Under the pieces are notes generated by a model. That model was not told where the DNA came from. It searched no databases and saw only the letters and a list, made by a program, of their open reading frames with translations. This document shows positions 108-42,425 of a DNA stretch of 64,000 bases, piece by piece. The stretch is from Bugula neritina (lineage: Eukaryota; Animalia; Bryozoa), in the NCBI GenBank assembly GCA_964035545.1, contig OZ037765.1, positions 2,852,001 through 2,916,000 on the forward strand, given 5' to 3'. How positions within the stretch are numbered: position 1 is the first letter of the stretch; each line of letters opens with the position of its first letter. Both the position numbers and the translations under genes were made by a program.

Positions 108-3100
108 AAAGAGGTAAATTAACACCTGGAGATGCTATCATAGTAGAAAGTGGTATTCTGAAACCAGCAAAAGAGAGAATAGTTACTGTGTCTGTACCTT
201 CACTAGTAAGTCAATATTTTTAGATCCCATTGATTTTGTACTATATTATTATATGATATATCTTATTTTGTACATAATATTTTTATATCAACTGATTTTA
301 GACTATAATATGATCTAGGGCTAATATACTGATCTTAGATAATTGTTGAGACTGTGTCAATACTTTTTGGTAAATTTTCTCAAACTTTAAATATCCTTCT
401 TTTTTAAAATTCTATTTGCATTGTCTTCGAACTTTTTTTCAAAGTGGTGCCTACATGCATGCATAAGTTTTGTTTCTGGTTTAAATAGAGCAATGAATTT
501 ATACTGATTGATTCTTGTGCTTTTTGACAATGTATATAAGTTTATTATAACTTTATGGAAAACTATCATCTTTAACATGTTCTCTGTAACAGGAAGCTGA
601 TGACTGTGTATCCAGTGTTACATTAGGTTATGAAAGTGGACAATTATCCAATCAGATGAAGACAGGACCATGGATTTTCACTAAACAGCAAGGTGTGACC
701 TTTGAACTGACTATTAAAGTAAAACTACAAGATGGACATGAGAATATAATATGGCAGGAAATATACACAACTAGTAAAAGTGAGGAGAATTTATCTCATG
801 TAATATTATATTAAATGCCATGAGGAGATAACTTAGCAGATTTTGTTATGTAGATTTTCATGGGAATTAAGGTAGCTTCACTATCTCTTGTATGAGTCGA
901 TGTGTTCATTATATCTAATCACGTATATGTGTATATGTATGTGTATATGTATGTGTATGTATGTGTGTATGTATGTGTGTATGTATGTGTGCATGTATGT
1001 ATGTGTATATATAATATATGTGTATGTATGTAGTTTATGTAATATGTGCATGCATGTGTTGTGCCAGGAATAACTTATTGAGTTGGATAGAAACAGGCAT
1101 GGAGCAACAATCTTAATCATTGATATTATTGTTCACTCTTTGTCTTGTATACTTTATCAAAATATCAAAATGGTTACATCCTGTAATAAAATATATTATA
1201 CATAAGTAACCTTCAAATAATATCAACAAAAACAAAAACTTCAAAATTATAATGACACTTGCAAACATCAGCTCCTTAGAACGTCTTCCTGGCAAGTGAA
1301 ACTACTAACGATTATAATACAAACAAATATAACTTAACAAAAAGCTAAAAAATGGCTGAATAAACTGCAAAAATCAAATTTCTATATACTTTTATTCAAA
1401 TACTGGGCAAACAGCCAGGCTTATCTCCCTAGAAAATTTGTATGTATGTATATGTGTGTATGTATGTATATGTGTGTATGTGTGTGTTTGTGTGTGTTTG
1501 TGTGTTGTGTATGTGTGCCTTTGTGTGCATGCATGTGTGCCTTTGTGTGTATGTATATATTTTATCTGTAGCACCCAACTCACCAGATGGACTTACAGTT
1601 GACACCAGAACTTCTACTTCAGTTACCATCTCCTGGTTTCCAGTAGTTTATACAGATAAGATCTACTCTATTCAACAGTACCAGGTGAGTAATAGATTAA
1701 AAGGCATCTTTTTAAATTAACTGTCAAATGTTACGCCCACTTGATATACTACATGCTCTGCAAGTTACCAAAGACACATTTGTATATTATCTTGTTGCAT
1801 CCTGGAGTATATATCCCCGTTACAAATTATGCCTATGATTTACATACACAGCGTCATTCATTTTTACGCTGTAACATACCCTGGGCATCTCAAACTTTTT
1901 AAAATAACCCTTAATAGAAACACTCAAAATTTTGGGTGAAAATTTTTTTCAACAGGGCAGTTTTTCATATGAATATATTTTATGATATGAGTAAATATAT
2001 ATGATATTTACTTCTATACTGTCTGAATATAAAATCACTGACTACAGGTAACATGCATCACAACTAACAACACCTTTAATGATAGTGTGACAGTAAACTC
2101 AGTGAGTTACTATAACACACCTGACTCTTCTACCACCTCTCTAACTATAGAATCACTCTATAGTCAAGTAAAATACAGCTGTACAGTTAAAGCTCTTCTG
2201 TCTGAGAATGAGTTTGGAGAAAGTTCTAGAGAAGTTGTGTTCTGGACTAAACCCGAAGGTAAATAGCTGTAGTCACAAAATTTTTAAAAAGATTTCTATG
2301 CATATACTGATTTGAGACTTGGAGCTTAAAAAATTGCAATAAATTTAAGCTTTTCTATTAAGCTTTTTAAACTTTAAACACTTAAATAATCTGAAACTTT
2401 TAGTTTGTTGTCAGAAGACGTTAAACATGTCAATAAAAAATGTAATTGCTTTATTTTAGAGCCAGCATTTGCTTTCAGCAGTGACAGTGAAGAAGAAATC
2501 ATTACAGTACCTCTACCAAACATCACATCATCTGATGATATTCTGAAAGGATATGACTCCATGGTTATTGTTGTTGAAAAGTTGTCATCCAGGAAAAAGA
2601 GATCCATTACTGTAGATAGCATAGACAATGTGACTGTTTATATAACAGCATCATTTCCTGTTACCAACTACCCATCCTCACTTAGTGTTGGTGATAACCA
2701 GATATATGGTGGTTACTGGAACAGACCTCTAGACAACCAATACTCTTATCACATTGCTGTAGGATTTAATGCTAAGACTGAAAATGATATTTTAAAACTT
2801 ACCACTATTCCTGGTGCAGAGTCTGTAAGATGTAAGTGTGTGGCTATGCATGGTACTAGAATGTCATTGCGAATTAGGAACTTTTAATAAGGGTTTACAT
2901 GAATTAAAGGTCGGTGTGCTCATTGTCTCTGTATATTCAATTAACACGAAGAGATCATTTACTTATCTGTATATACCTGATTGTATTATACAGTGACAGG
3001 AGCTCCTCCTAGTAGTGAAGATAACCAAGAGCATGTATCAACAACACAGAGAACAGGTGGGAAGCATCAGCTAGTATACTGTTTCTTTAATTTTAAATAC

Positions 3101-3646
3101 TCAAAAGCAGTAAACTTCTGACTGTGTTTTTCATTGTAAAAGCTTTAAACTTTGTTTGCTTAATTCTAATTGAGAAATGCCTGATGAGTTTTTTACAGCC
3201 ATAACATATATTAGTATATATATATTTGTTGTTTTAACAACTCAGTCTGGGTGGTTGGAGTAGCAGTTGGTGTTCCAATGGGTTTCATCATTATTCTACA
3301 AGCAGTGATTCTTATTGTGATGTTGGTGAGAAGATCTTCTGGTACTGAGTCTAAAGAGAAAAGAGCTCACCTTAATACTGAGTACGAAGAAGTGGGACTA
3401 ACACCTACATCTTTTAAGAATCAGGGTGCTACACAAGATGTACCAGCACAAAGTGCTGAGTATGAAGAAATGGGACTAGCACCTACATCTTCTAAGAATC
3501 AGGGTGGTACAGGAGACGTACCAGTACAAAGTGCTGAGTATGAGATAACAAGTCCCCAGGCTACATCAGATGATCATGTCTATGAGAAACTAATTAAACA
3601 GATGGAACAAGTCTGCTATGAAAATACTCCAACAATCAAAAATTAA
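108..3646 (+). CDS. Receptor copy A (5' part lies upstream of the window): beta domain - FN3 - LAR-type membrane-proximal domain - stalk - TM - Tyr-motif tail
   Basis: GT-AG exons with compatible phases: 108-205, 593-779, 1572-1684, 2048-2258, 2460-2831, 2994-3056, 3246-3646. FN3 pattern (PNSPDGLTV..TSTSVTISW...LYSQVKYSCTVKA); RKKR|S then YITASF...[16 protein letters not shown]; hydrophobic TM; tail with 5 Tyr. Exons are paralogous to copies B-D. Confidence 0.85.
921..1060. repeat. TG/TA-rich compound microsatellite
   Basis: Visible (TATG)n/(TG)n runs in a copy A intron. Confidence 0.9.
1440..1560. repeat. TG-rich microsatellite abutting the FN3 exon acceptor
   Basis: Visible runs ending ~10 nt before the AG at 1570-1571. 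Confidence 0.9.
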
Positions 3647-5015
3647 CAAAATTTAAAACTAGTTTAATGTACTGGCAAAACAACTTTTACTAATGATCTG
3701 GGAAATGCTCAGAAAAACAACTTCAAAAAGTATTTTAATAATCGTGCATGTATTATCTCGCTATAAGATGATGTGTTTGAATTATATGAAAAACTTGCAT
3801 TGCTGTGTTCATATTTTATTAACCTTTATCTTAAACCTCTTTTCAATGATATATTCTATATTATTTCAAATTATATATCTGAGCAGCATCCCCTAATTTA
3901 TAGAATTTATTATTTCCTGTTGGTTTTATGTATAATTCATATTCATTATATTAGCTTAATGAGCTTGCATTATTTTTAGTTGCTATTTTTATTACAATAT
4001 AATATTAGCCTATATCTTTATTACTAATTCAGCTATCAAACAACTTCTTATTGCATGAATATTTTTTTGAAAAATATATTCAATATTATGTATATAGTTT
4101 AAGAATGAATACAATGCGCTAATTAAGTAGACAAACTTGAGACGCCATTTTTAGCAGAAGAGTTAGAAAGTCAAAGTAGGAGCTGATCACAGATTGATAA
4201 CAGAAAAAAGAAAACTCGATTTCAAGCTACGTTACAAAAATTGATATTTGACAATTAGCTTTAACTGACAGTAGCTTTATAATTCAAAGCCATGATATCT
4301 GTGCACTCACAAAAATACAGCAGTGAGAGATTTTTAGTATAAAATACATATATATCTACATAATGTATTTTTAATTGAAGATATCTTTAATTATTTGAAG
4401 CTATAGAAAGTCAGCACAAAAAAACTCTGGAGTGCATTCTTGTAGTTCAAGTTGTTTTTTTCTCGATGGCAAATTTTCTTTTGCATGTATAGGTTAGAAG
4501 ATTTTCTTTATTGAGTTGAATAAGAATAACTAAAACTTGGGTCCATATATCAGTGAGATATAAATAAGGTTTAGTCACATAACTTAAACAAGCCGCCATT
4601 CAAATTCCGTCATATAATAATATGTTACAATAATAAATTACCTAGAGATTAAATATAGCTTTTCAAATCAATTGGAACTATATTGCAAGATCTTTTTATG
4701 AGTAGACTCTACTATAATTTTAGACTTATAATTAAAGCTTTTTTGCCAAAATAATTACATGCGTTAATACTGACTGAGCTTGCTGCAACTTGGAATTTAT
4801 GTATGCTAAACAAAAAAACGCTAAGTAAATTAGTTTTATTTTTGAACAGTATAAATGTCAATTCTACAAAAAAAAAATTTGCAAATATAAGAATAAAGGG
4901 TTAGCAAAAAATTGTATACAATACTTTTTGACCAAATACAAGATAATACGTTTAAGCCTAAACAATAAATATGAAAACAATTTTATTTGATTAAGCAACT
5001 TTATTTGATTATAAT

Positions 5016-5340
5016 TGTAGTGAAATTAGCGCTAGTTTGCTAAGCTATTTTAGCAACACTAAGAAAAGCTTTCTACAGCACAGCCAGTGCTAACTCTGGC
5101 ACTTGGCAATAGGTGGTGCTATAGTGAACTGTGTAATTTTAAGAGAGCAAAATAAGTAAGTTATTTACATTAATTATATTGTTTCGTTTTTTGTTTATTG
5201 TTTATTTATGTTTGTCCTGATCATGTAAGTTTGAATTGCAATAATTGTAGTCTTGACTATGTCAATAGAAGTATAATAAAACATAATAAAGGACATCAGT
5301 GAAGAGTTATTGCTCAACTCAAAGCCTAGTTCACTATACA
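5016..5340. mobile_element. Probable solo LTR (325 bp)
   Basis: TGTAGTGAA...TTCACTATACA termini and 5-bp TSD ATAAT (5011-5015, 5341-5345). The paralogous region downstream of copy C (~28775) shows the empty site with a single ATAAT. Confidence 0.75.
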
Positions 5341-5559
5341 ATAATGAGCCTTCAAAATATTGACTATAGTCACGGGAAAAATTAAATTTCAATTTTTTTT
5401 CCCAAGCATAATAAATATAGTCGTGTAAGATTTTTTTAAATAAAAAAATATATATGTATCATTAACAATCTGAACACACTACATTATATTAGCTCTGTCA
5501 CCCGTGATATCGAGCACTTTACTTTGCTGGAACTCCAACTAGATTGACAATCAGCATAC

Positions 5560-6139
<580 letters not shown>

Positions 6140-6168
6140 GATTATGTATCTATATATTATATCTGTAG

Positions 6169-8114
6169 CACCCAACTCACCAGATGGAGTGACAGTTGAT
6201 ACCAGAACTTCTACTTCAGTTACCCTCTCCTGGTTTCCAGTAGTTTATACAGATAAGATCTACTCTATTCAACAGTACCAGGTGGGTGCTAGAGCAAGAT
6301 AGGTAGTCAGCTTTTTAAAATTGCTGTCAAATGTAACGTCAAATTGTTATACTCTTTATGTGTTTGTCCATCCCTTGCAAGTTACCAGACAGACTTATAC
6401 ATGCATGTAAACTATAAGCATAACTTATTGTAAAGATTATAATCGAGAATTAAACAAAATAATATGTACATGTATAAATTATCTTGTTTACTTCTTGATT
6501 ATCACGCTGTAAGATACCTTGTGCGCATCTCAATTTTTTCAAAATTAACCCTTAGTGAAAAACACTAAATATTTTAGATGACATAATGTGCCTCAACGTA
6601 AGGCATTTTCCCATATGAATATATTCCATAATATAAGTAAATAGAGATGATATTTACTTTTATACTGTCTGAATATACAATCTCTGCTTACAGGTAACAT
6701 GCATCACAACCAACAACACCTTTAATGATGGTGTGACAGTAAACTCAGTGAGTTACTATAACACATCTGACTCTTCTACCACCTCTCTAACTATAGAATC
6801 ACTCTATAGTCAAGTAGAATACAGCTGTACAGTTAAAGCTCTTCTGTCCGAAATTGAGTTTGGAGAAAGTTCTAGAGAAGTTGTGTTCTGGACTAAACCC
6901 GAAGGTAAATGATTTTAAATTAACCCAGCAGTAAAAACATTTCAATGCAGTTTCCTGCAACTTTTGGCCCAATACATTTAGGTTTTGAAAACATAATAAA
7001 TAGTCTACAAAAACATTAGTTACTTGGGTGAAGATGCCATTAGTTAACAATGTAACCAATAAACAATGTGTTATTTTAGAGCCAGTGTTGACATACAGCA
7101 ATGATGGCAATACTAATATAGTCTGTCCAGGGGAGGAAATCATCACAGTACCTCTACCAAGCATTACTTCATCTGCTGATACTCTGAAAGGATATGACTC
7201 CATGGTTATTGTTGTTGAAAAGTTGTCATCCAGGAAAAAGAGATCCATTACTGTAGATAGCATAGACAATGTAACTGTTTATATAACAGCATCATTTCCT
7301 GTTACCAACTACCCATCCTCACTTAGTGTTGGTAATAACCAGATATATGGTGGTTACTGGAACAGACCTCTAGACAACCAATACTCATATCATATTGCTG
7401 TAGGATTCAAAGCTAAGACTGAAGATGATGTTTTAAAGCTCACGACTATTCCTGGTGCAGAGTCTGTCAGATGTAAGTGTGTAGCTAATTATAAGCATGG
7501 TACTAGACTTTCATTGTGTATTCAGAGTTGTTATTAAGGTTTTATATGAATTAGAGATCAGTGTGCTCACTTGTCGTGTATATTAATTGAGATAGCACGA
7601 AAAGATCATTTACTCATGATTCTATTATACAGTGAGAGGAGCTCCTCCTAGCAGTGAAGATAACCAGGATATAAGTGTATCAACAACACATAGAGCAGGT
7701 AGTATGGAAGGCATCAGTATACTATTCAGTTAGTTTTTTGGTATTTAAAAGCAGTAAACTTGTAACAGTATAATTATTTAGTTTGCCTAATTCTAATTGA
7801 AACGTGCCTGATGAGTTTTCGCAGCAATAATATATATGTGTGTGCGTGTGTGTGCGTGTGTGTGTGTGTGTGCGTGTGTGCGTGTGTGTGTGTGTGCGTG
7901 TGTGCGTATGTGCGTGTCTGCGTGTGTGCCTGTGTGTGTGTGCGTGTGCGCGTGTCTGCATGTGTGCGTGTGTGCATGTGTGAGTGTGTGCGTGTGTGCG
8001 TGTGTGCGTGTGTGTGTGTGTGCGTGTGTGCTTGTGTGTGTGTGAGTGTGTGGGTGTGTCAGTAGGTATGTGTGTGGGTATGTGTGTGTGTGTGTGTGCG
8101 TGTGTGCGTGTGTG

Positions 8115-8151
<37 letters not shown>

Positions 8152-9294
8152 GTGCGTGTGTGAGTGTGTGCGTGTGTGTGTGTGTGTGTGGGTGTGTGGG
8201 TGTGTCAGTAGGTATGTGTGTGGGTATGTGTGTGTCAGTAGGTATTGTGACAGCTGATACTGGTTACTGTATCAGCTGATGATTGTTGCTGCGTCAGCAC
8301 AGATGCTGTTTGGCACGGGTGCCCATGTATTGTGATTCACTTAATAAAGGGTGAATGGATGGAGAACACAGATGCAGGCCACAACTCTGGATGGAGAACA
8401 CAGATGCAGGCCACAACTCTATTTTTGTCTATTGCCAACAGTATATTTTCTAAGTTAGACTTCATTCATACTTAGACTCATACTCATACTTGTACTCATA
8501 CTTGTACTCATACTTGTACTCATACTTGTACTCATACTTGTACTCGTATTTTACTTGTACTGTAACAATTATTTTGACAATTAAGTATAGATTGCCTGCA
8601 TCTTTAGCAGAAGGAAAATTGAGCTACACTCACTCATCTACCAAAAACTGTCAGTAAATAGCTATTGCGAAAGCTTTCACAAATAGCTTTCGTTACACAA
8701 TAATTTTTGGAAAGCTGCCAAAAAGCTACTGCAACAGGTATGTGTGTGGGTATGTGTCTGTGTGTGTGCTGTTTCCTGCTATACCCTAACAGGGAACAGC
8801 GGAGATAGGTGAGAACATGTGAGAAGTGATATATATTTGCTATTTTAGCAGCAGGCTGGGTGGTTGAAGTAGCAGTTGGTGTTCCTATTGGTTTCATCGT
8901 CATTATACTAGTAGTCATTCTTATTGTGGTGTTGGTGAGAAGATCTTCTGGTACCGAGTCTGAACAGAATAGAGCACAGCCGAGTTCTGAATATGAAGAA
9001 GTGGGACTGACACCTACATCTTCTAAGAATCAGTGTGGTACACAAGATGTACCGGTACAAAGTGCCAAGTCTGGAGAGAACAGAACTCAGTCTAATCATG
9101 AATATGAAGAAGTAGGACTGCCACCTACATCTTCTAAGAATCAGGGTGGTACACAAGATGCACCAGTACAAAGTGCTGAGTATGAGACAACAAGTCCTCA
9201 GACTACATTAGATGACCATGTCTATGAGAAAGTAACTAAACAGATGGAACAAGTCTGCTATGAAAATACTTCAATCATCCGAAACAAAGTTTAA
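6169..9294 (+). CDS. Receptor copy B: 3' module only (FN3 - LAR-type domain - stalk - TM - Tyr tail); no upstream exons found
   Basis: Open exons 6169-6281, 6694-6904, 7080-7472, 7633-7698, 8849-9294 with intact splice sites. No signal or PAN exons found between 3646 and 6169. Confidence 0.75.
7830..8240. repeat. (TG/CG)n compound microsatellite
   Basis: Directly visible in the last intron of copy B. Confidence 0.92.
8246..8736. mobile_element. Probable solo LTR (491 bp)
   Basis: TGTGACAGC...CTGCAACA termini and 5-bp TSD GGTAT (8241-8245, 8737-8741); internal 33-bp duplication and 12-bp TACTCATACTTG tandem; homologous in reverse orientation to 38832-39149. Confidence 0.75.
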
Positions 9295-11455
9295 ACTAGT
9301 TTAACAAACAGTGGTCAAGCAACTTTCGCTATTGATATGAAAATATTTTATAAAAATTCTTAGGTTAATTGTGTATATATATGCTATAGTGCTAAATTGT
9401 ATGGAAAATTACATTGCCAAGTTAACATTTGGTTAATATAAATTATTTATCTTAAAGTGCTATTCAATAACATATTCAGATTTAACACTACCTGTTATTT
9501 CAACTATTATATATCTAAGCTGCAATTGCTTTATATAGGACTATATTTTCTGTTTTTTGTGCGTGGAGATTGTGTATATTGTTTATATTCAAAGAGTGAA
9601 AAATTGTTTCGCTACCAACTATATATAGCAGCTAATGTAGAAAACTTTATGATCTGTTTGAGTTGTAATAAAACTTACATATAATGTATAATTCCAATAA
9701 CATAATGTAATATATTCTACTGTAATATTTCCTTTGCATGACATTTGGATATCATAGTTTCTTTTATTGCATTAAATTTAGTATTCAAACAGCTGCAAGA
9801 ATTGCTTATATTATTGTTGGCAGCATTTAAAACATAATCAAACTATAATACTCATATTATATATAAATGCAACATACTTTAACAAAAAATGTGTCACTAT
9901 TTGTGTAGCATGTCACAGAAAGTTTGCCACAAAGACAGTCACTACGTGCACTCTAAGTAACTTTATGTAGTTACTAATCTACAAACACTAAAAGCTTGAA
10001 AATAAAATAAACTTAGCACATGCATAAACGGAATAATTATGCTATTTCAAATAAGATTTATTTATATTAAGTATTGCAGTTTAACGCAGTTTATAGTGAA
10101 TTAGGCAATATAAAACACAACACACAGATGTATCTTGACTAATCATATAGTTAGCCTTGAGACAGCCACTTATGGCAGCAGAGTGTGAGGGCCAAAGTAT
10201 AGCTGACAGAAAAATAAAGTTTAGCATACTAGCTGCTAAAAAGAATTATTAAATTTGCTTAACTGGTTACTTTTTAAACGCATGATTGGTTTGCAGCCAT
10301 CTTAGTGGTATGACATCAATGCTAATGTTATCCTTGGCCTTCTAGAAAAAAAATATTTTAAGTTTATTGGAAAATTAAATTTAATTTCTGACTGAAAATT
10401 GCGTAGGTGTAAACGAAAATTAACAGTAAGTATTTATTCTGCTTTATTCATAAGTTTGCTTTTTTATAGCAATATTCATTAATTAAATTTCATTTTCTTC
10501 ACCTAATTTGTGCAATTGGTAACTTGAAAAGCTACATCTGAAATTTTTAAACTATGTTTATTAATACAAGATGCTTACTTTATTTTATTTTTTGTTAAGC
10601 ATAACTACTTTACTTTAACAATTTGTATTCAGCTGACACAGTTCTACTGACAGTGAAAATTTGCTAATGCCTACCATAAAAGAAGTACTTGCTGGCAAAC
10701 CTTGTGTAGAGTTATTTTCTCTTAGCAATCAAAAACACTCTTGCTTCTGAGGCCACATTCGAAAGTCTTCAATTACTATAATTATACGCAATTATTGGTT
10801 CTTCTGTCACTATAAAGTAAACATTCCTGCATAAAGATCTCAGAAGATCATAGAACTTGACCAATTTCCTTCATTGTACTTGGTGATTGAGTATCTAAAA
10901 GTATTCAGAATAAATATTAGCATTAGTTTAAATTTTTCAACAGTTTTAGTACTATTTTTCATTTTTTCGATATACTGCTGTTTTATTTTTATAGTTTTAG
11001 AAGTTATTCTCTTAACCTGTTGTGATATCTTAGCATGCTGAGATTATATATAGAATTTAGCTGTTGAAATTAGTTTTCTATAAATTTAGTTGTTGTTTTT
11101 TTCGTCCACCACGCAGTTTAAAAATAAATGCATATTAAGAGCTTTTGTTCGAATTAGCTACCCTACGGTTTACAATGCATAGTACTTTAGTATCTAGTCT
11201 AAATATATTTGTACACATATAGGTAAGTATAGGTTTCTATAGCTAAGCTGTTATAGCTACATTCATTTAAACATATTATATAGGAGGCAATATTTCTATT
11301 AATTTCTCTGAGCACAATGGATATATAGTTCGCATATAAATTGGAAGCAAATATACAAAAAATAAACAAGTTTTTGACTTATAAGTGAAAGACTTTAATA
11401 ACCAATACAGAACAAAATAAAATAATTCAGGTATTTAAACTCTTACTTTCCTGAA

Positions 11456-11625
11456 GCAACCGTGGTCTAGGGGTTAGAGTTTTTGGCTGGTAAACATGAC
11501 GTCATGCATGGGTTTGAGCCCTGACAAAGGCCATTGGTGACGTTAAAAGCAATTGCTCCTGTGATTCATTTAAATAAATCCTTAGCCCGCTTTAACAAAA
11601 ACCCTTACCACTAGGGTTTTTTACA
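11456..11625 (+). mobile_element. tRNA-derived SINE (degenerate copy)
   Basis: A-box TGGTCTAGGGG and degenerate B-box GGTTTGAGCCC; body matches 54477-54664. Confidence 0.7.
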
Positions 11626-12555
11626 TGGATATAGGCACTATAAACCTGCGTGACTATTTTCCTGGATGAAAACAACTGACAGCAATTTATTCTGCATAGC
11701 ATATTCACCCGATGTTTTCACTCTGTCACACTTATAGTCAGTGTCTTTTATAAATATTCATTATACTTTGAGTTGAACATAGCTTCTTTTTTCAGACAAT
11801 AGCTCTAAAAATGCAAAGTAGGAGATAGTTATATGGTTTACAGACTACTGGTTGCAGCTAACCCATGTTCAACCATGCATGTACTAATTCTTTTTTCGTA
11901 TTTTAGCTTTTATAATGTAAATCATAAAATATTAACTTGAGAGTATCAAACATTGTGCATTATTATGTCTAATAAATTATTAACCTTTCAGAAGTAGCCA
12001 ACAATAAAAAATTCATAGCTTCATTCAAATTGAAAGAGCCATTTTCAATTTGGCATCTAAGGATAGTTCATGCATAAAATTAAACTGAAAAATGCATACA
12101 GTTCAATATACATATCTCCATATCTCCATATGATAAAATATGTTTTTCAAGTAGAAAAACAGATATCTTTGGTAAAAAATTTAATTTGCTTTTAACGCTC
12201 CAGTAATACAAAAATAGCATTTTTAAAAAAATGTCTATACTAGTTCAAATTGACACATTCTTTCATTGAAAAACTATCTACAAGTGAAGATAAAATGTTG
12301 CTTTTTTGCTGGCAGTCATGATTTAAACAGAGATATATGAGCCTATAAAATATATTCAGGGACACTATTTCATGGCTTATCATTTTAGCTATTCAGTTTT
12401 AGGTTTTGACCTTTCGAACTTCCTCATAGTAGGAGAGTTATATAATGAATAATTTTTACTTTTTCTGCTATAAATATAACTCTCTTTGGTACATGCAACT
12501 TCACTTTATACTGAACACTATTATAATGTCTGTGTGTAGGCATCGCTAACTTCAT

Positions 12556-27273
<14,718 letters not shown>

Positions 27274-29861: not shown

Positions 29862-32800
29862 ATGGACAGAATACTGTACTTGTGCTTTCAATTGTGGTTT
29901 TTTCTAGTGAATGTGTCTCTCTCTGCACCAGTACAAGGTATATTAGATTATAGCATACTATAATGTAGTTGATTAGGTTTTGTCTGGTGTTGTTTAAAAT
30001 TGCTGCATGGATACCTATTGGACACATTGTACTGACACATTAATGAGTTAGTACTATCTCTGAAATCTATACATTAAAGAGATAAAATCTTACAACTCAT
30101 GTTTAATAATTGGGAAGCACTTCAACTCTTCACAGGCATGAAGTAATTTGCTAATTTCGACTAGTATTATAAAATGTCAAAGCATTATAAGATGTATTAC
30201 AATATATGCTCTGCTCTTACATTACACTACATTAGACTACAGAAATACTTGCATTTGTCTAGTCTGAATGCTGCACTAGTAGATATATGAAAGCTAAATT
30301 TTTTTTTGAATATAGTTAATAAAGCATTTGTATAGATTTTCTCAACTTCCTCCTTGCAATACAGTCATGCGACTTTTGTATTGTGAAGTCATCAAAGGCT
30401 GCCTTTTGTAACATAAAATACCAGCTAATACAACTGTTTAGCATAGCTTCACTTTACTCAACACTACCTCAGTATATGGACATTACTATAAAGTAGTGTC
30501 AACATGGACAGAATACTGTACTTGTGTTTTCACTTGTGGTTCTTTCTAGTTACTGTGTTTATCTCTACACAAGTACAAGGTATGTTAGATAGGATTTTGC
30601 AATAATCTGTGAAGTTTCTCCGCAGTATTTATATCTGACAGATCATTTGAAAACTAGATTCATTTTTTAACTTATATTTACCTGTATATAATATGTTATT
30701 TTTGAATACAAACAGAACCTGAATAGAAATTAACATAAATTTAGGTGGTACTATATATAAAGATATAATTATTTATCATTGTTAGCCATACTGAGTGATT
30801 TCCTAGTTGTATGAGCATAATTGATTTAAAGTCAAAGTTCGCATATAAAAAAATGTTTAAGACATCTTGTCCTGATATAGTAATAAAATATATCTGATAT
30901 TAATTTATATCTTAACATAAATGTAGATGAAAAATATAGTGTTGAGTTAACCCAGCACCTCCCCCCTCCCCTCCCCTCCCTGGTGGTATGTGGTTTGAAT
31001 CTGGTGGAGGCAATTTTTTACAAAAAAATATAAAATCAAAGAGTTTTGTCAATCTCAGTATTCAAATGCACAATTTCTATAATATAGAATTTTGACAAAT
31101 TAAAAAGTGATAGCAGAGCAATGTTCTTTATAAATATGCTGTTAAATAGTATATAATACTCTCTTAATAGTGATATATGATGCATAATAATAACATTTTT
31201 CAAATAGACATTCAGTCCTTTTGAATTTTAATGTTTCAGAATTGGTTTAATAAAAGAAACACACAGGCTTAGCTGCATATTAACCTAATCAAAACAAATT
31301 AAGGAGAAACCAATTGGCTACATTAATTAAATGATCTTATTAATTGTTAGTTGTAATTTCAACTTTAAAAAATAATGTGTCTCTACATAACTTTAGCACA
31401 AAAGTACATTGCTCTGTTTATGAATTTGAAGGAATGACCTGTGAATGGGAGTCAGGTCTGGGAATACTTGATCCTTATGTACGGTATGATAGTGGGCAAA
31501 CCTTATTTGTAACCGGTGAAGATGAGTGTAAAGCTCAGTGTATGCAGCAGACATCATTTATATGTGCCTCAATAAACTACAGACCTGATGATGGAGAATG
31601 TCAATTGTTAGCAGAGAATACTCAGACTGCTTATGCTGTTTACAGTAGAAGTGGTGTCCAGCATCAGTTCAGATATTCTATCAGACCAGACTGTGCCGGT
31701 AAGTGTCAACAAATTTCAAGTGGCAGATGACTGTAGCGGTTAACTGCTCTAACTGCATTATTAAAGTCTAGCTTTTCCTAGTAACTAATTAGCATTTCTT
31801 TATTTTAAGTGATTGCGTTGCCAAAAATATCAGAAGTTAAAAACCAAAATTTGGTTGGCCAGTGTAATTATTATTTGTTTGCGTGTTTTTATGTTTTGCT
31901 TATAGATCAATTAAGAAATGCTGTTATAATGCTCTATGGCGCTAAACACACAGCTCAATATAGTAATGTTCTAGCTATAGTGTTGAATATGCGCATGTAT
32001 AGCTATAAAGTACTAATTACTTATAAGAGAGCAACTTGCAATCACGCGATGCTGATAACTTTATAAACAAACTGAGACAGATAGAATGGTTGAAACGCAG
32101 TGCTTCACTTGCTGTAGTATATATTCTGTGTATACCGCTACAAATTAGGTTAATGCTTTCTATAATTTATGCGATAGAATATAGACGTTCACAAATTATT
32201 AAAATTTATTTGTTAGATAAGTGGCTATAATTGCAAACTTTTTGAAGCAGTAGACTTATAACTAGCTTTTGTAATTAACAGGAATATGGCAACCATGGAC
32301 AGCCAAACGAGGATTTTTTCTCAATACCTACAGTGGAGGAGAGAATAAATACCTCCAGACAGGAGCACCGTACCTTGGAAGTTGCATGAGTTTCTGTTTG
32401 CAGGATGACAATAATAACTATACCTGTAGTTCTATAGTGAAGTCAATCAGTTCTAGTATTTGCGACCTTATTGATAAAAGATCAGACGATGCAGGACTAA
32501 CCCTAGAACTTTCTATTGAACTTCAGTCTTTTGACTTACCTCTTTGGTATTCAGGTATGTCAGAAATTTTCTAATGATTATACAATGCTGCATTTAATTT
32601 TCCATTTTTGTAGGTGGCTTGAAAATAATTTTTAAAAGTTGGTAATTTCATTTTATTCCAGCAACTGCATAATTATTATGAACACATTTTTTAGTGTTTT
32701 TTGAAAGTGTGTAATAATGACATTTTACTAATGATCACATTTAGAATAAAAAGAAAGATATAGTTATATTGCAAATAGAACATATCGCAGTAACTTGTGG

Positions 32801-35800
32801 GTTATTGATGCAATCAGGCAGAGAACATTAGTCCTTGTAAGAGAAGAGATAATAGAGGGAAGTTTGGAAGGAGGAAGTTTGGGTGCACTTTTTGGCATGG
32901 GGGGGGGCAGCCCTGGAGTTGGTTGAGCTGGTGGTCCAGGCGAAGGGGAAGGTTCAGGTGCCCTGTGCGGTTTGACTGGGTCACGGACGAGGATCTCTCA
33001 CTCTCAGGGTCGAGCCACCCGTCCTCTGAAGATAGGTTGGCGAGTTTGCTTCAGCAGGGGAGGTGCCTGCCCCGCAGCGTCGGGGCTGCCCTGATAGGGT
33101 TTCAACCGCTGCTCGTTTTAAACCGAAACCTGTCCTGAGCGTTTCACACAGTACGCGTGAATGGGCAAAACTTTTATGACACAGTAAGGCCCCATGAACT
33201 TTGGCTGAAGTTTTGCTGACTGTCCGCGCTGCCTGCAGTAGCTCACCATTTATACCCAGTCTCCTACTTGATACAAGGGGGGCTCCTCGGAATCCTCCAT
33301 TCTTGTCTGCCACTGCTTTTCTCGCAGTGCCTTGTGGAGTTCTTCCTTGTTCTCTATGAGCTTTCCAAAATACTCATGTACAGGAAACTCAGGTGCAAGA
33401 ACATAGTAGATTAGGTGTGCTGTGTGCTGCGGTGGGCCCGCATGATTTGAGGAAGCACCACGTCCCATTCCTCCTAACCCCGGCCTAGGAGCAGGCTTCA
33501 GAAGGCATCCCCTAACATCCGATTGTTCCTCTCTGCAACTCCATTTCCTTGCGGGTGATATGGGGTAGTCCGGCTCTGGTTCATTCCCAATATCCAGCAG
33601 AGGTCTCCCATTAGCTGGTCAGTGTGGATCTGTTTGGGAAGTCCGAAGTAGCAGAACACTCGCTGATCCAGGACTCGGGCCACGGCGGCAGCTGATGCAT
33701 CTGGTATAGCCAGAGCGTCAGCCCATCGAGTGAAGTGGTCCGTAAGCACCAGTATCCAGGTATTTTCTCTAATCATAACAACATAGGTCCGACTAGGTCC
33801 ACCGCCACTATCTGCCACAGCCAACCAGCATACAGCCGGTATCGACTTGTGGTCTCCGTAAGGCGGCCATGTTTTCTAGCATGACAGACCTCAAACTGCC
33901 GTATCTGCAGTCGTTTGTCCTGAGTCAGTCTGGGCCAGTACCAGCACAGCCATAGACACTTGATGACTTGACTGGCCCCAGCATGGGCCTGTTTGTTGGT
34001 TTTCCAAATCAGTTCCCGCCGGAAGGCACATGGACATACGACGTCTTCCCTTTCTCGGCGGTTGTCTGACGCAAGTGTTATGGTGAGGAGACCACCCTGG
34101 CTGACTTTGAGGAAATCCCAGCGGCTACAGAGAAGTTAGTACTCAACATCCCTTTGTCACTGCTGTTCCTCGGTAGATTGGCGGTTCTCCATTTTGGCCC
34201 GGAAGATGTCAGCTACTGCCCCTGGAAGTGTCTGTTGGAGCCGGCTCAGCTTCTTGATGTTTTGATACAGCGGGGTTGGTCCGTAGGGAATTGATGGTAT
34301 CCGGTGGGCGTTCGGACCAAAGATGCCCGCGTTCCTAATTATGGACGTCGTCATCTCCTAACTGCTTCTCTACGTCAAGGCGGGCGGGTCCTCCATCTTG
34401 TCTCTCGATATGCAGACCCTGCTTGCCTTTCTCCTCCGGCCATCGACTCATCCCGTCGGCGTTCCCATGCTCCTTTACAACACGATGCTCAATCTTATAG
34501 GAGAACTCAGCAAGAATCTCAGGCCATTGGGCCACCTGGCTCGAAGGCTCTGCACGTTTATACAGCTATATCAGAGATGCATGGTCTGTTCGCAACCTGA
34601 ACGCTCTCCCATACAGATATGGGCAAAAGTGCTTGACTGCTTTGACTACTGCCAAGAGATTCTTCCTGGTGATGCAGTAGCTCTTCTCGGCGGTCAAAAG
34701 AGTCTTGCTATAATAAGTGACCGCCACCTCAGTCTCACCCTGAACCTGTGACAGGACAGCTCTCACACTGTGGTCACTGGCGTCGGTGTCCAGGATGTAC
34801 TCCTTGGCTGGCTCAGAGCACGCCAGGGTAGGCGCCGCTATCAGCCTAGTATTGAGGTGGTAAAATGCCTGCTGCTCCTCCTGTGTCCACTGCCACTGAA
34901 CCCTTTTAGCTGTTAGCCAATTCAAAGGCTGTGCAACTCCCGCAAACCCGGAGATATAATACTGCTGGTAGTACCCCACCAGGCCCAGGAATGCCCGCAA
35001 CTCAGGGTGGTCACGGGGACAGCCCACTCTTCCACGGACTGCACCTTCTCCGCATCGGTAGCAAAGTCGTCTTGGCTAATCACATGACCCAGGTACTTAA
35101 CCTCCGGCTGCAAGAGTGTACACTTGGAGGGCTTCAGCTTCAATCCGCCAGCCTGAAGACAACTGACAAGAGTTGCAAATCTGGGAAGATAACTATGACA
35201 TCATCCAGATAGATGAGCAAGGTCTTCCAGTGCGATCCACTGAGAACCTGCTCCATGAGTCGCTGGAAAATTGTCTGAGTGAACGTTAGTCCAAATGGTA
35301 GAACCTTCCCTTTTTAGAGCCCGTCGAGAATAAGGAATGCTGCCTTGTCATGTGCATCAGGACTGAAGAGAACATGTCAGTGCCCACTTGACAGATTCAA
35401 AGTACTAAAGTACTTGCTCCCTGCGAGGCCATTTAGAGAATAGTCTATCCGGGGGTGAGGGTAAGCATCCCGGATGGTAACACTGTTGAATTTGCGATAG
35501 TCCACGCAGAACTTGCAACTACCATCTTTCTTTTTGACCAGGATCATTGGGGAGCTCCACGCACCGTAGACAGGGTCGATCAGGTCCCAATCAAGAAGAT
35601 CCTGCACTTGTCTGCTTACTTCCTTCTCCTTCTCCAGACCTAGCCGCTGAATGGGCTGCCTGATGGGAGTTGTCCCGGCTGCCAATGGTATCTCAAGACA
35701 CACCACCTTGGTCAGCCCCATGTCTTTATCCCCATAACTGAAGACATCACTGTAATCCACCAGTAGTGAAGCCAGGTCAGCCAATTACTCCGATACCGCT

Positions 35801-38800
35801 GCCTGGCCAGGATGAGGGGGGACTCCCTGTCACTGTGGAGCCACTGTCTCTAGTGCCGGCCCCACGTCCGCATCCTGGATGGAGTGGTACTTCCCCACCA
35901 GGGCGCCAGCCAGTAGTTTGACCAGCTCTGTGAAAGGGTTGATGCATTGCACGATGAGCTCTCCCTGGCAGTTTAGCCAACTTATGCTGTTTGCCAATTG
36001 AATCCTCTCCAGCACTCCTTCCACCAGTCCCAGTCCAGCTATCCTCTCGCAGTTAACCTTGCAGCGTAGGGTAGCCTGGAACCGTCCGGGTACCGTGCAG
36101 TCCTGAACTACCTAGACTCGGCCCACTAGGGATCTGCCAAACTTGTCAACACAGACAAGTTCTTTTCCAGCCATCACCAGCAAGAATTCTGGAAGTCCAT
36201 GCGGCGCTGGTGTTTCTCCAGAAACGGTGTGCCCAGAATGGCGTCCTCCGTCAGATGGCTGATGATGAAAGTCTCATGAATCACCTAATCACAAACTCGT
36301 CCAGGTAGAGTGAGAACGCCGTAGAAGGGAATCCAATGGGAAGGTGGTAAGAAATAGCTGCTTCCGTATGGCTGGAAACTTTTCAGTGAGTCGGCCTCTG
36401 TAGCAGACACTGCTTGGGTCACCACGGAGGGTCGCCTCCTGGTCTTATTGACCACGGAGGTTTTTAGAGGTCTAGAAAGTAGCTTAGGGAACTCTTGTGA
36501 GTAAGCCTTATTTTCTTTTATGACCTCGTTGGTTAACCCCGCAAACCGGTGGCCTAGCTGGAGTTTAGGAAAACCTTGCAGTCTCCAAGATCTCTGAGGT
36601 GCCTGCTACTCTGCGTCAGTGGGCTCCCTCTGAGTACTTCTCGGCACGACAGGAGGTCTAGATGGGCCCCTGGGTCCCTTAGGTCGAGGAATCGGCCGTC
36701 CAGTATCAGCCGGCCCATTCGTCATCCTCCCCGGTGCGGCCTCTGTTTCTTCCAGAATGGAGCCTGACCCAGGCTCACAGTTGGCAGAATCTACCGTGAG
36801 CCTCTGGAGTTTAAAGGCATCTTCCCCTTTTGTAGACGTTGCCGGCATACATGGCCCAAGGCGCCACACCTCCAGCAAGTGGGTTGGGTAGGCCTAGCAG
36901 GCTTGCCCCAAACATTGGGTGTCCGCCTGTCATCCTGTTGCTGTTGCAACCTCACTACCTCTATTTGCAGGCTCCTCACTATGTCTAACAACATGGTGAA
37001 CTGCGGGGAAGTCAGTGCAGGGTTAGCAATGTCGGCTACTTGGGCCTCTTTTTTGGGTGTCTCCTCCACTTGACCTGCTGTAAAGTCTGCTCCGTGGGAG
37101 CATCTACTTGATAGTAAGACCGTCTCATCTCCAGAGCCTCTTATATAGTGGAGATCTTGGCGGCCAGGTAGTACCTCTAGAGTCTGCCATCATTCACGGT
37201 CATCTTGCCGTTCTTTGTATAGGTTCGGCTGAATGCTATTAATGCCAGCTTTTCTATGGCATTAGCATGGTCTTGTAGAGAGGTCCATTTGTCTCTCTTC
37301 ATACTCTGGAGTTTGTCCTTAGCATCTCTGGCAGTCACACCAAACCGTGCTCGGAGTGCCTGAAAGATGTACTGGACATCGTCTGCGAGCGCATAGCTCT
37401 TAGCTGGTCCGGTCAGACAGGACGTTAGCTGTAGAAGGCGTATCGGTGCCGGCCACTTGGCGGTGGTAGCAACGTCTTCAAATTCCTTGATAAGTTGAAA
37501 TTTTACCGATAATTTTGAAATTTAGGGATTAAAGGTTAAAGCAAATAGCTGGCAATTGGTAGCTATTCATCTAATCAGATTTAATGGCTATAATTATTCA
37601 ACAATTACCCAGCTGTGCCATCATCATCACTTACAAAAAACTGGAAATTTAAAGTAAGCGCTTTTGTTTATATACGTAAAAAAACCGTATAAATGGTCCA
37701 TTGATCTGTGGATAGTGTCGCATGAAAAGACATATATGGTCTATTGATTGAGTAAAGGTTAAACTCAACAGAATAAAGTTAAAATTGATGCCTAAAATTT
37801 TTTTAAAATTTACAAATAATTATAGACTTGAATGTTCACCAATTATTCTAAAAGCACTAATTTTTGTTGTTTTAGAAAAATAAATTGAAAATAATGTACA
37901 GGCTATGATATTTGTAATAGCTTCTTTTTATTAAATTTGACAAACTTCTAATTTTATAGACAGTTCTCTAAGCACAACGAACTCAACACTTGAATATTAT
38001 GGATCGGGTGGAAGTGACTTTATGTTACTCTTCAACTACAAGATAGAAGCAGATGGATATTTAGTTGGCTGGAAGTATACGATTGGTCGTTCTATAACTG
38101 ACTACTGTGACTCATATGCTGCTATCTGGAGACAGACAGGAGAAGGTAACTCTGCTGTATTCAATTTGATTACAGAAACTCTGCTCACACCTAACGTTGT
38201 ATCTACAGGAGAGATCAGATTCCAGTTTGTACAGAACTCTACAGAAGTAGTTAGAAAAGGAGACTTTCTTGCTCTGTATGTAGAGGACTTGAGTAATTCT
38301 AGTTGTGAAGGCAACCTCGTCTCATTTAGACCAAATTTCCGAGAAGACCCTTCAGCTTATGTACGTAGAAGTAACCCTAACAGAGACAGAGTAGACAGAC
38401 TCACAGCTTCAGATGTTGGCACAGAAAATAGAGGAGTAGCACTGAGAGCTTACATAGCAGGTAAGTTTCGTTTAACAAAAGGTTTAACACTCTATAAAAT
38501 GTATTCAATAGCTATACAAAGAAATTTATTATATTACTACTCAATTGTGCAGCAATGTTGTTGTCTATTATATAATGCATGTACAATATTTAATGCTATA
38601 AAACTATGGCTTTACAAAAATTCTTTATTCCTTGCAAAATGCCACAACAGCTAAGCTCAACCATATCAAGGTAATGCTGGGAAGATTTGTAAATTGTACA
38701 ATATTATATAATATATATCAGAGTTTAATGGGAAGCTCACAATAGATATAAACTGACATCTTAACTCCAAGCTGAGCCTTTTATAAATGAAAGAGCATAA

Positions 38801-41397
38801 TTTGCTGTTGTAGTTTTCGCAAGGTGGTGTATGTTACAGGAGCTTTTTGGTCAAAGCTTTTAGTGAAATACTTTTGATGAAAGCTTTTTTGTGAAAGCCT
38901 TTGGCAATAGCTTTTTGACTGTTAACTTTTTTGTTGTGTTATAAGCTAGTGTAGCTTAAGAACTGAAAAAAGAAAGTTGATTGTACTCATTTCTTTATTA
39001 GTTTTTCTTTGGTTAGAAAATGCAAATGACTTACACTTTATTGCCAAAATAATTGAACACAGTATTGTATGAAAATAAGCAATAAGCAATAAATTGAGTC
39101 GTCATCATGCATCTGGGCATTCACGCCATTCAGCATCTATGCTGTCACAGTGTACTATATGCAAAATTCCTGGTAATTTTCTGCCAATAAATTTTCAGTT
39201 TAGCAAAAGCCTGATTGTATTGGTTTCATTTTCATATATCAATTAATCTGCATGCATTTCTTTTACTTTGGCAGAGAATTTAAAACTTACTGGCAATCCA
39301 TTATTTTCTCACACAAATGTGTCAAAAGGGCAGATTAAAATTACATGGGAATTTCCAGTTACTACACCCAACCAGGAGCGCGCAACTACCCATTTTAAAA
39401 TAGAATGTTCAGACAACTCCAACTTCAACACAATAATAAGCTCCAAATTAGTTTCTATAGACTACAGAGAGACTGTGATTAGTAATCTGAATATACAACA
39501 ACCTCACTATGCTAGAGTATCTACTGTGAGGAATTATAATGGCGAAGAGTTAATACAAGATGTCTATACAATCAACTCTTTTTTCTGTGCAGGTGCAGTT
39601 TTATAACTCTTACATTGTAGTTTTGCTGATATTATTTTTAATAAAAATATATTTTATGATAAATTTTAAAAGTATAATAAACTGATGTATTTTTCAGCTT
39701 TACCAACAAAGCCTAATTTTTTTTGTTTCAGAAAGAGGCAGAGGGTCATCAACTAATGTTATCATAACAGAAATTGAGGGTCTACAACCAGAAAAAGTAA
39801 TAATTACTGTATCCATCCCTTCATTGGTAAGTTTTTTCAAGTGTTTATGAAGCATTGGATTTATTACACTAATTTAATTTCTATATCAACTTTGCTAATA
39901 ACTCAACTAACAAACATTTCTGTCATGCAGCAGTTGCAATAAATACTGAATGTCCTTTTCCACATATAGCAAATTAAAGTTAAGATGATTATATTACTTG
40001 TGTATAAATGTGCAAATATTGATTACCATGATTAAAACTGATAGTTGTGTTTAATGAGCTACATTGAAAAGTAACTTATAGTCTGTAATTTACTGTATAA
40101 TAGGAAACTGATGACTGTGTATCCAGTGTTACATTAACTCATGGAAGTGAGCAATTATCCAGTCAGAGAAAAACAGGACCATGGACTTTCACTGAACAGC
40201 AAGGCGTGACCTTTGAACTGACTATTAAAGTAGAACTGCAAGATGGATATGAGAATATAATATGGCAGCAAGAATACACAACTAGTAAGACAACTTATAA
40301 ATCTAAGAAAGTTATATGAGCTGTTGAAAATAAATTCACATGGTAAAATAGTAAAACTCACTAATCTCAACGTTGGTTAAAAGTAATAGCCATTTGATTC
40401 TGACCTCATCAAGTTTTGAAATTATAAAAATCAATTACTTTTATCTTGTACAAGACTCAATGATAGTGTTATAAGCATTCATACAAAGTATTATTATAGG
40501 TCCAATGGCAGCATGATACTTCAACTCTGCATCTCTGCAGCTTGTTCATAAAAAACAGAAAGTTTGATTGTAGATCTTGCTTACATTTATTAGCAGATTT
40601 TTGCAATTTCTAAAAAATCAATAAAATAAAAGTCTCTTAAAACAAAAAAACATTTTTTGCAGTTTTTCAAGATATCAGATGTTCTCAACCTCCATCTGTA
40701 GCCAATACTGAAACCCATGGTCTAGAAAAAGAATTCCATATCAACTCCACAGTGTCATACTATTGCCAAGGTTATGGTCCTATTGTCATCACATGTGAAC
40801 TGGTAGATGGTAAAGGAGAATGGTCTGACAATCCTCCTATCTGTGAGCTACCAATTCAATGTAGGTGTCAGTAATTTATCTGTTGTAATAAAAAATAAAA
40901 TATTAGCAAAATAATAAAACTTCTTAAAAATATCTTGATTTAATTGCATCAGCAAAAATGAAACTACATTATTTAATAAAAAATATTACTTTCATCTTGA
41001 AAAACTTCAATTTTATCTTCACTGAATGTGTGTGCTGCAGTGCCATCTGTTTTGCATTTTAGCAGCAAACTGGGTGGTTGGAGTAGCAGTTGGTGGTCCA
41101 ATGGGTTTCATCATCATTCTACTAGTAGTCATTCTTATTGTGGTGTTGGTGAGAAGATCTTCTGGTACGAAGTCTGGAGAGAACAGAGCACAGCCTACTC
41201 CTGAATATGAAGAAATGGGACTTGCGCCTACTACTTCTGATAATCAGGGTGCCACAGGAAATGTACCAGTACAAAGTGCTGAGTATGAGACAACAAGTCC
41301 TCAGGCTACATTAGATGACCATGCCTATGAGAAAGTAACTAAACAGATAGAACCAGTCTGCTATGAAAATACTTCAACAGTCAGTGACAATGTTTAA
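29862..41397 (+). CDS. Receptor copy D, complete (~747 aa): SP-PAN-PAN-beta domain-FN3-like-beta domain-Sushi/CCP-TM-Tyr tail
   Basis: Exons 29862-29937 (or alternative 30504-30579), 31432-31698, 32282-32554, 37960-38460, 39275-39592, 39732-39826, 40104-40284, 40663-40860, 41063-41397; sum 2244 nt, in frame. Confidence 0.82.
30504..30579 (+). CDS. Duplicated alternative signal-peptide exon of copy D
   Basis: ATG...CAAG|GTATGT encoding MDRILYLCFHLWFFLVTVFISTQVQG; same length and phase as 29862-29937. Confidence 0.7.
32860..37498 (-). mobile_element. Degenerate Ty3/Gypsy internal region in a copy D intron (no LTRs seen)
   Basis: Minus-strand fragments of gag (QLIKEFEDVA..KWP; CWRCGALGHVCRQR), RT, RNase H and integrase (TPYHPQGNG), homologous to the 56-63 kb element, with many frameshifts. 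Confidence 0.9.
38832..39149. mobile_element. Probable solo LTR (318 bp), same family as 8246-8736
   Basis: TGTTACAG...CTGTCACA termini and 5-bp TSD GTGTA (38827-38831, 39150-39154); both ends align to the reverse complement of 8246-8736. Confidence 0.75.
40663..40860 (+). CDS. Sushi/CCP domain exon unique to copy D
   Basis: Phase 1-1 exon: CSQPPSVAN...EFHINSTVSYYCQGYGPIVITCELVDGKGEWSDNPPIC (4 Cys, conserved Trp). Not in the supplied ORF track. Confidence 0.8.
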
Positions 41398-42081: not shown

Positions 42082-42425
42082 GCCTAGGGCCACACGGTGC
42101 GTATTTTCGCATGCGAAAATTGAAACCACGCGTAGCAAAGGCGTCCACTGTAGCGTCAGTGACGCGTGATAAATAAAGCTTTCATTTTTGAATCGCACTC
42201 GCTTTCAATAAAGCGCAATTTACTGGAATTTAGCACTAAAATAAAGAAATTGGGCTCGCTTAATAACTACCAGCCAATTAGGTGACGACGACAGAGACGA
42301 TTTGCACTTGCGTTGAAAATGCAGAGCGACAAGTGCGAATGTTTTCTCAACGCGCACAGTGGACACCTTTGCTACTTGTGATTTCAATTTTCGCATGCCA
42401 AAATACGCACAGTGTGGCCCTAGGC
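42082..42425. mobile_element. MITE, PIF/Harbinger (Tourist)-like
   Basis: ~70-bp imperfect TIRs (GCCTAGGGCCACAC.GTGCGTATTTT.GCATGCGAAAATTGAAA...) and 3-bp TAA TSD. Confidence 0.8.

What the first reader, a model, noticed from the sequence alone, without database searches (positions are those of the whole stretch)
108..41397. Tandem array of diversified PAN-PAN-FN3 receptors with kinase/phosphatase-less Tyr-motif tails: candidate undescribed immune/allorecognition receptor family
Seen: four head-to-tail paralogs share exon structure (SP, 2 PAN/Apple, an unnamed domain, FN3-like domains, TM, short Tyr-rich tail), but no two copies have the same combination of ectodomain end, furin site, TM type and tail. 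Established: clustered, rapidly diversifying type-I receptors with SH2-docking tails and no catalytic domain are typical of recognition systems (Hydractinia Alr cluster, vertebrate KIR/LILR/Siglec), and PAN/Apple domains bind proteins or glycans. I do not recognise this domain combination as a named family. Inference: a lineage-specific immune, allorecognition or gamete-recognition receptor cluster; function cannot be read from sequence.
Basis: partly seen in the sequence, partly recalled or inferred. Interest (0 to 1): 0.92.

Follow-up and report, generated by a model that had tools for sequence, protein, structure and literature searches.

The report
Bryozoan paired receptor/phosphatase gene cluster
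A colonial sea animal (moss animal) has about 30 clustered genes that attach one fast-changing, sugar-binder-like sensor either to a tyrosine signalling tail or to a built-in phosphatase enzyme; this looks like an on/off receptor pair for recognising non-self, but its function is untested.

Summary
The receptor genes are real, but the window is one slice of a larger system. The genome belongs to the bryozoan Bugula neritina complex. One chromosome holds 32 copies of the ectodomain SP-PAN-PAN-X-FN3-FN3 within 1.4 Mb. About 23 end in a non-catalytic tail, mostly Tyr-rich (A, C, D here). Watersipora has both types too. X folds as a lectin-like jelly roll with variable loops; it is the only domain showing a positive-selection signal, which weakens to p=0.012 once rate variation is allowed. 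Corrections: B is only a 3' partial duplicate, D ends in a Sushi domain, C's tail is cut by a stop, and no tail has an ITAM. Best reading: germline paired non-self receptors in which the counter-receptor carries its own phosphatase (about 0.5); allorecognition about 0.2. No RNA or within-species polymorphism data were obtainable, and no paper describing the family was found. The scan noted this cluster in neighbouring windows and a similar layout with another ectodomain elsewhere.

The parts
108..3646 (+). Copy A, 3' seven exons (FN3 split 108-205/593-779; FN3 split 1572-1684/2048-2258; PTPRU-like FN3 with RKKR furin site 2460-2831; stalk 2994-3056; TM plus Tyr tail 3246-3646). Its SP, PAN, X and first FN exons lie upstream of the window
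   Evidence: same junctions in the independent model P0067
6169..9294 (+). Copy B: 3' partial duplicate (FN3 6169-6281/6694-6904; PTPRU-like 7080-7472; stalk 7633-7698; TM plus tail 8849-9294); no SP, PAN or X; a gene fragment or an alternative 3' end for A
12556..12631 (+). Copy C signal-peptide exon
16490..16744 (+). Copy C PAN1 exon
16903..17166 (+). Copy C second PAN-like exon
17315..17812 (+). Copy C X exon: lectin-like jelly-roll domain with hypervariable loops
23620..26602 (+). Copy C FN3-like exons (23620-23937; 24214-24311/24670-24856; 25150-25262/25630-25843), PTPRU-like exon without furin site (26022-26393), stalk (26540-26602)
26792..27273 (+). Copy C TM plus tail with five 78-bp YEEV/YEEM repeats; ends at TAG 27271-27273, with a 47-codon remnant to 27417
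29862..30579 (+). Copy D: two tandem signal-peptide exons (29862-29937, 30504-30579)
31432..32554 (+). Copy D PAN1 (31432-31698) and second PAN-like exon (32282-32554)
37960..38460 (+). Copy D X exon
39275..40284 (+). Copy D FN3-like exons (39275-39592; 39732-39826/40104-40284)
40672..40860 (+). Copy D Sushi/CCP exon, in place of the FN3, PTPRU-like and stalk exons
   Evidence: (E 1e-5)
41063..41397 (+). Copy D TM plus Tyr tail (YEEM, YETT, YEKV, YENT)

Best explanation
A bryozoan family of germline-encoded paired recognition receptors related to receptor tyrosine phosphatases (RPTPs). SHOWN: one ectodomain (SP-PAN-PAN-like-X-FN3-FN3, then optional FN3/PTPRU-like/Sushi spacers) is attached either to a non-catalytic tail (about 23 copies on C1, mostly acidic and Tyr-rich) or to tandem PTP domains (9 copies); the phosphatase class has intact catalytic motifs in the one member read in full. 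X is a jelly-roll beta-sandwich whose loops vary most. INFERRED: X loops bind non-self ligands, probably glycans of microbes, epibionts or competitors. Clustering of tail-type copies lets Src-family kinases phosphorylate YEEV/YEEM, YxxM and YEN motifs, recruiting SH2 proteins. Phosphatase copies engaged by the same or related ligands set the threshold, either by dephosphorylating those tails or by priming Src as RPTP-alpha and CD45 do. Spacer exons would change receptor height and shedding.
For: 32 X exons on C1 in three subclusters. All nine copies at 3.95-4.23 Mb have PTP exons through to the last exon and none matches the Tyr-tail exon. P0054 has the same ectodomain (77% to C) plus PTP, E 1e-104. 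Watersipora has both types, P0004 and P0077. X model pLDDT 90; nearest folds are a phage tail-tip domain (Z 10.5), a capsid-associated protein (Z 10.0), the Cwp84 lectin-like domain (Z 9.2) and CBM32/F-lectins (Z 5-6). Selection signal only in X. RPTP ectodomain exons do not group apart from tail-type ones, and they match tail-type copies better than their positional counterpart. Pseudogenes show birth-and-death turnover. Analogy: a clustered family of lectin-domain RPTPs is tied to parasite resistance in a snail (PMC12297450).
Against: No expression, ligand or signalling data. A jelly-roll fold does not prove sugar binding (Z about 9-10, under 10% identity). The X selection signal falls from 2dL 111 to 8.9 when site-rate variation is allowed. 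No ITAM or hemITAM in any of 17 tails, so which class activates is unknown. The two classes lie 0.5-1.1 Mb apart, not as adjacent pairs. A recombination test was not significant and exon trees are weakly supported.
Confidence: 0.5

Rival explanations
1. Allorecognition (colony fusion/rejection or kin recognition): X domains bind allele-specifically across colony margins; a self match engages phosphatase copies and a mismatch leaves the Tyr tails active.
For: Colonial animal. Overall design resembles the Hydractinia Alr and Botryllus FF/FcoR clusters (PMC9546547, PMC12582321). The X exon of RPTP copy 1 is only 86% identical between two Bugula lineages, against roughly 93-96% for PTP exon stretches.
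Against: No Ig domain and no ITAM. No within-species allele data: the other runs and the draft assembly differ by 5-13% also in introns, intergenic DNA and a flanking gene. The run matching this assembly shows D introns mostly without a second allele. Earlier scan notes list several other receptor arrays in this genome that compete for this role.
Confidence: 0.2
2. The tail-type copies are decoys or modulators: they heterodimerise with, or compete for the ligand of, the RPTP copies, whose main job is adhesion, larval settlement or symbiont sensing.
For: Tail-type stalk and TM align with the RPTP stalk, TM and juxtamembrane region (E 7e-11), and both carry a YENT motif at a similar distance from the membrane. 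Furin cleavage of the ectodomain is a standard feature of adhesion-type RPTPs (own knowledge).
Against: Tyr motifs were multiplied in the tails (five repeats in C), and a tail motif is shared with Watersipora, which argues for active signalling. Loop hypervariability is not expected of a housekeeping adhesion receptor.
Confidence: 0.18
3. A mostly neutral, unstable tandem expansion: a few RPTPs are functional and the truncated copies are drifting duplicates.
For: Partial duplicate B, stops or indels in at least five copies, LTR elements in introns, microsatellite-rich introns.
Against: dN/dS is 0.36-0.58 in PAN, first FN3 and PTPRU-like exons. Most X exons are open (1 stop in 33). The tail-type gene exists in a second Bugula lineage and in Watersipora.
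Confidence: 0.12

Closest known systems
Biomphalaria sudanica SudRes1 MEGF/galactose-binding-domain RPTP cluster (PMC12297450)
   Same: Lophotrochozoan; clustered paralogous tandem-PTP receptors with a galactose-binding-like jelly-roll domain; variable ectodomains and copy number; linked to parasite resistance.
   Different: Ectodomain is EGF repeats plus GBD, not PAN-PAN-X-FN3. In the passages read, no matching class of phosphatase-less Tyr-tail receptors is described. Only fold-level likeness is suggested here.
Vertebrate paired receptors (KIR, LILR, SIRP, Siglec, Ly49; own knowledge)
   Same: Clustered genes with a shared variable ectodomain on different signalling ends; birth-and-death evolution.
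   Different: There the inhibitory member recruits SHP-1/2 through ITIMs and the activating member uses a charged TM residue and an ITAM adaptor. Here the counterpart carries its own PTP, the TM cores have no charged residue, and there are no Ig domains.
Hydractinia Alr family (PMC9546547) and Botryllus FF/FcoR (PMC12582321)
   Same: Dozens of clustered type-I receptors in a colonial animal; FN3-like or Sushi spacers; Tyr-motif tails, some matching the ITIM consensus.
   Different: Those use Ig V-type domains and ITAM/hemITAM motifs and are genetically tied to allorecognition. None of this is shown here.
RPTP subtypes R2A (LAR), R2B (mu/kappa) and R4 (alpha/epsilon)
   Same: Tandem D1/D2 PTP, PTPRU-like juxtamembrane FN3 with furin site; best solved relative is RPTP-alpha (E 2e-95); C-terminal Y-x-N motif.
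   Different: No Ig or MAM domains. Bryozoan PTPs form their own long-branched clade (100/100), so GenBank labels such as Ptprm are best-hit names. The window's copies have no PTP.

Membership tests
Receptor protein tyrosine phosphatases | Cytoplasmic PTP domain with HCxAGxGR motif | tested here: not met
   Absent from A-D; present in nine C1 paralogues, with the motif read intact in P0054
Receptor protein tyrosine phosphatases | PTPRU-like juxtamembrane FN3 with furin site | tested here: met
   Pfam PF23144 E 4e-9; RKKR in A and B, lost in C, exon absent in D
R2A/R2B RPTP orthologues (LAR, mu/kappa) | Ig and/or MAM ectodomain and PTP grouping with LAR or mu | tested here: not met
   No Ig or MAM hits; bryozoan PTPs form a separate clade excluding LAR rows; no vertebrate mu/kappa row was in the tree
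Paired immune receptors | Shared ectodomain on opposite signalling ends in one gene cluster | tested here: met
   opposite sign of the two ends is inferred, not shown
Paired immune receptors | ITAM/hemITAM or charged TM residue in the activating member | tested here: not met
   No ITAM or hemITAM in 17 tails; no charged residue in TM cores
Paired immune receptors | ITIM consensus in some tails | tested here: inconclusive
   S/L-x-Y-x-x-V matches in B, C and four other copies, ITSM-like in A; these short matches sit in the same YEEV repeat and also fit Src-SH2 sites
Paired immune receptors | Co-expression in immune cells with opposite signalling | not testable with these tools
   No RNA run holds the locus
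Hydractinia Alr / Botryllus FF-FcoR allorecognition receptors | Ig V/I-set ligand-binding domains | tested here: not met
   X is a jelly roll; spacers are FN3 and Sushi
Hydractinia Alr / Botryllus FF-FcoR allorecognition receptors | Extreme allelic polymorphism within a population | tested here: inconclusive
   Only divergent lineages were available; flanking DNA differs as much as the genes
Hydractinia Alr / Botryllus FF-FcoR allorecognition receptors | Genetic linkage to fusion/rejection | not testable with these tools
   Needs crosses
Galactose-binding-like / F-type lectin domains | Jelly-roll beta-sandwich fold | tested here: met
   Model pLDDT 90; Cwp84 lectin-like domain Z 9.2, rmsd 3.5, 139 aligned; CBM32 and F-lectin Z 5-6
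Galactose-binding-like / F-type lectin domains | Sequence-level membership of a Pfam lectin family | tested here: not met
   No Pfam hit for X or its relatives; atlas look-alikes are unnamed eukaryote clusters

The most novel reading that the evidence does not exclude
Bryozoans run a self/non-self or allorecognition system in which a previously unnamed lectin-like domain with CDR-like loops is exchanged between Src-substrate tail receptors and receptors that carry their own phosphatase, so the off signal is built into the paired receptor instead of being recruited through ITIMs.
Probability: 0.3. Interest if true: 0.9.

Novelty: new variant of a known kind. Interest (0 to 1): 0.72.

Why it matters
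No immune or allorecognition receptors of bryozoans turned up in the papers searched; the Bugula genome paper mentions only weak Alr1 similarities (PMC7576161). This cluster gives a mappable 1.4-Mb candidate locus, an unnamed ligand-binding domain with defined variable loops, and a paired-receptor design with an intrinsic phosphatase. That would be a different solution to the activation/inhibition balance from the ITAM/ITIM logic of vertebrates, Hydractinia and Botryllus, and it would link to the lectin-RPTP resistance locus of snails.

Tried and rejected
Expression: no RNA run was offered; all four runs laid were DNA contigs spanning introns, so junctions rest on frame, splice signals, paralogue conservation and the independent gene models P0067/P0054/P0004. 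Polymorphism: runs X2, X4, X5 and the 2020 draft assembly differ by 5-13% in genes and flanks alike, so they are other lineages and gave no allele test. Recombination (PHI-like) test: not significant; exon trees are star-like. Full-length fold of P0004 failed (pLDDT 39); only its second FN region was usable. Foldseek found nothing at E<=0.001 for X. Full-length P0004 homologue search returned only itself. Rejected: B as a complete gene; LAR/PTPRM orthology; ITAM signalling; a charged-TM adaptor model. As the operators required, spliced models were never sent to a search tool: they were searched exon by exon by reference, and joined models were used only inside local scripts for frame checks and local comparisons. 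Four literature searches combining the family's features gave no paper on it.
Full report
Observation. Splicing at AG/GT sites gives open frames for C (12 exons, 979 aa to a TAG at 27271) and D (9 exons, 744 aa), and for the 3' parts A and B. Pfam finds PAN_1 in the first exon after the signal peptide, fn3 and Fn3_PTPRU near the membrane in C, and Sushi in D. The first FN-like exon matches fn3 weakly (5 of 14 copies, best E 8e-5). The second folds like fibronectin, gp130 and LAR FN3 domains (Z 8.5-8.7). The second PAN is supported only by its cysteine pattern. A's missing exons lie upstream of the window. B has no SP, PAN or X exon, so it is a 3' partial duplicate, possibly an alternative 3' end of A. 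C lacks the furin site and loses 47 tail codons to an early stop.

Organism and scale. A member of the X domain's 90% cluster is KAF6029364.1 of Bugula neritina. The 216-Mb genome is about 87% identical to the 2020 draft at a flanking gene, and three runs differ from it by 5-10% in introns and intergenic DNA, so this is probably a separate lineage of the B. neritina complex. The X exon has 32 close copies on C1: 6 at 2.81-2.89 Mb, 17 at 3.25-3.47 Mb and 9 at 3.95-4.22 Mb. One more is on C2 and distant relatives are on C2 and C3. In the 200 kb read directly, copies end in Sushi, three Sushi, FN3-PTPRU-stalk or FN3-PTPRU-Sushi. Tails are mostly acidic and Tyr-rich, with two short tails and one basic tail. 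At least five copies are damaged.

KAF6029364.1 joins the same ectodomain (77% identical to C over 627 aa) to tandem phosphatase domains with intact WPD, HCSAGVGR and Q-loop motifs. In this genome all nine copies at 3.95-4.23 Mb are followed by PTP exons through to the last one, and none matches the Tyr-tail exon. Two distant C3 copies also have PTP exons downstream. Watersipora subatra has both types: XP_067947407.1 is SP-PAN-PAN-X-FN-FN-TM with a Tyr tail sharing the HVYEK motif, and P0077 is PAN-X-FN with a phosphatase. The bryozoan phosphatase domains form their own clade (100/100) apart from LAR. The tail-type stalk and TM align with the RPTP's, and both carry YENT at a similar distance from the membrane. 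This suggests the tail type arose by truncation before D1, but the direction was not tested.

The X domain. It has no Pfam match. A profile found 53 relatives, named only in bryozoans; the rest are unlabelled contigs, some with the same PAN-PAN-X-FN order or with repeated X-FN units. Atlas look-alikes are unnamed eukaryote clusters labelled mostly sponge or annelid. The model (pLDDT 90) is a jelly-roll sandwich, nearest to a phage tail-tip domain, a capsid-associated protein and the Cwp84 lectin-like domain (Z 9-10.5), with CBM32 and F-lectins at Z 5-6. Variation among paralogues is concentrated at residues 9-18, 43, 111-115 and 123-157, around a nearly invariant core.

Selection and exchange. 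dN/dS is 0.76 for X, 0.53-0.58 for the PAN exons and 0.36-0.46 for most FN and PTPRU-like exons (0.71 for one FN half-exon). Codon site models give 2dL 111 for X (11% of sites, omega about 4.7) and nothing for PAN1, PAN2 or FN exons. The signal survives removal of gaps and divergent rows (2dL 74-89) but drops to 8.9 (p 0.012) when site rates vary, because synonymous change is also about 6.6-fold higher in part of the exon. The loops therefore look like old diversity kept in a homogenised frame, with modest direct evidence of positive selection. The draft assembly's RPTP X exon matches copy A (90%) better than its positional counterpart (86%), and its FN3-intron-PTPRU segment matches tail-type copies, including B, best. 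RPTP exons do not group apart in exon trees, but support is low and a recombination test was not significant.

Mechanism. No tail has an ITAM or hemITAM and no TM core has a charged residue. The repeated YEEV/YEEM motif in an acidic context fits Src-family substrates and SH2 ligands, YxxM fits PI3K and YEN fits Grb2 (own knowledge). The most likely working is that ligand binding by X clusters tail-type receptors into phosphotyrosine scaffolds, while phosphatase-type receptors with related specificity either erase that signal or prime Src, as RPTP-alpha and CD45 do. The architecture is shown; ligand, cell type and sign are inferred. I put innate non-self recognition at 0.5, allorecognition at 0.2, decoy or adhesion roles at 0.18 and mostly neutral expansion at 0.12.

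Comparison and novelty. The nearest functional analogue is the snail SudRes1 cluster of lectin-domain RPTPs tied to schistosome resistance (PMC12297450). Hydractinia Alr and Botryllus FF/FcoR share the overall design but use Ig domains and ITAM-type motifs. Literature searches found no description of this family. Earlier scan notes cover other windows of the same cluster and a similar tail-versus-phosphatase layout with a different ectodomain; I found the phosphatase class before reading those notes, and they are not counted as support. Verdict: real, undescribed in what I could search, a new variant of paired recognition receptors; interest 0.72, limited by the lack of expression, polymorphism and functional data.

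Limits. Spliced models were searched exon by exon by reference; the joined search step was left out. About half of the cluster is known by coordinates only. Retroelements in the window were only observed.

Noticed in passing
window about 18500-22400 (+) and about 32800-37500 (-): Gypsy/Ty3-like LTR retroelement sequences inside an intron of copy C and an intron of copy D, about 68% identical to each other; observed only.
   Followed up: no
window 56004-63508: Very young LTR retroelement with 309-bp LTRs that are 100% identical; observed only.
   Followed up: partly
window 42079-42426: 347-bp inverted-repeat element, MITE-like, at very high depth in all four runs; a contig in run X1 shows the empty site.
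   Followed up: partly
window 47819-53477: Peptide-transporter gene that looks SLC15A4-like, next to the cluster (recognised from the translation; not searched).
   Followed up: no
G000:C5:2141866-2310297: Two weak matches to the TM/Tyr-tail exon (31-33%) lie among several PTP exons: possibly a second RPTP-plus-tail cluster with another ectodomain.
   Followed up: no
L020:1195-1460 (G000:C1:3361195-3361460): One copy has a strongly basic Ser/Arg-rich tail (net charge +17) unlike all others; two other TM exons have 31-residue tails without motifs.
   Followed up: partly
L025:5549-10907: An unidentified animal contig carries three tandem X-FN units, with a weak PTP match further downstream.
   Followed up: partly
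L021:1-9300 vs G000:C1:3934605-3950776: The 2020 B. neritina draft and this genome are only 80-87% identical over most of a flanking gene region, consistent with cryptic species.
   Followed up: partly
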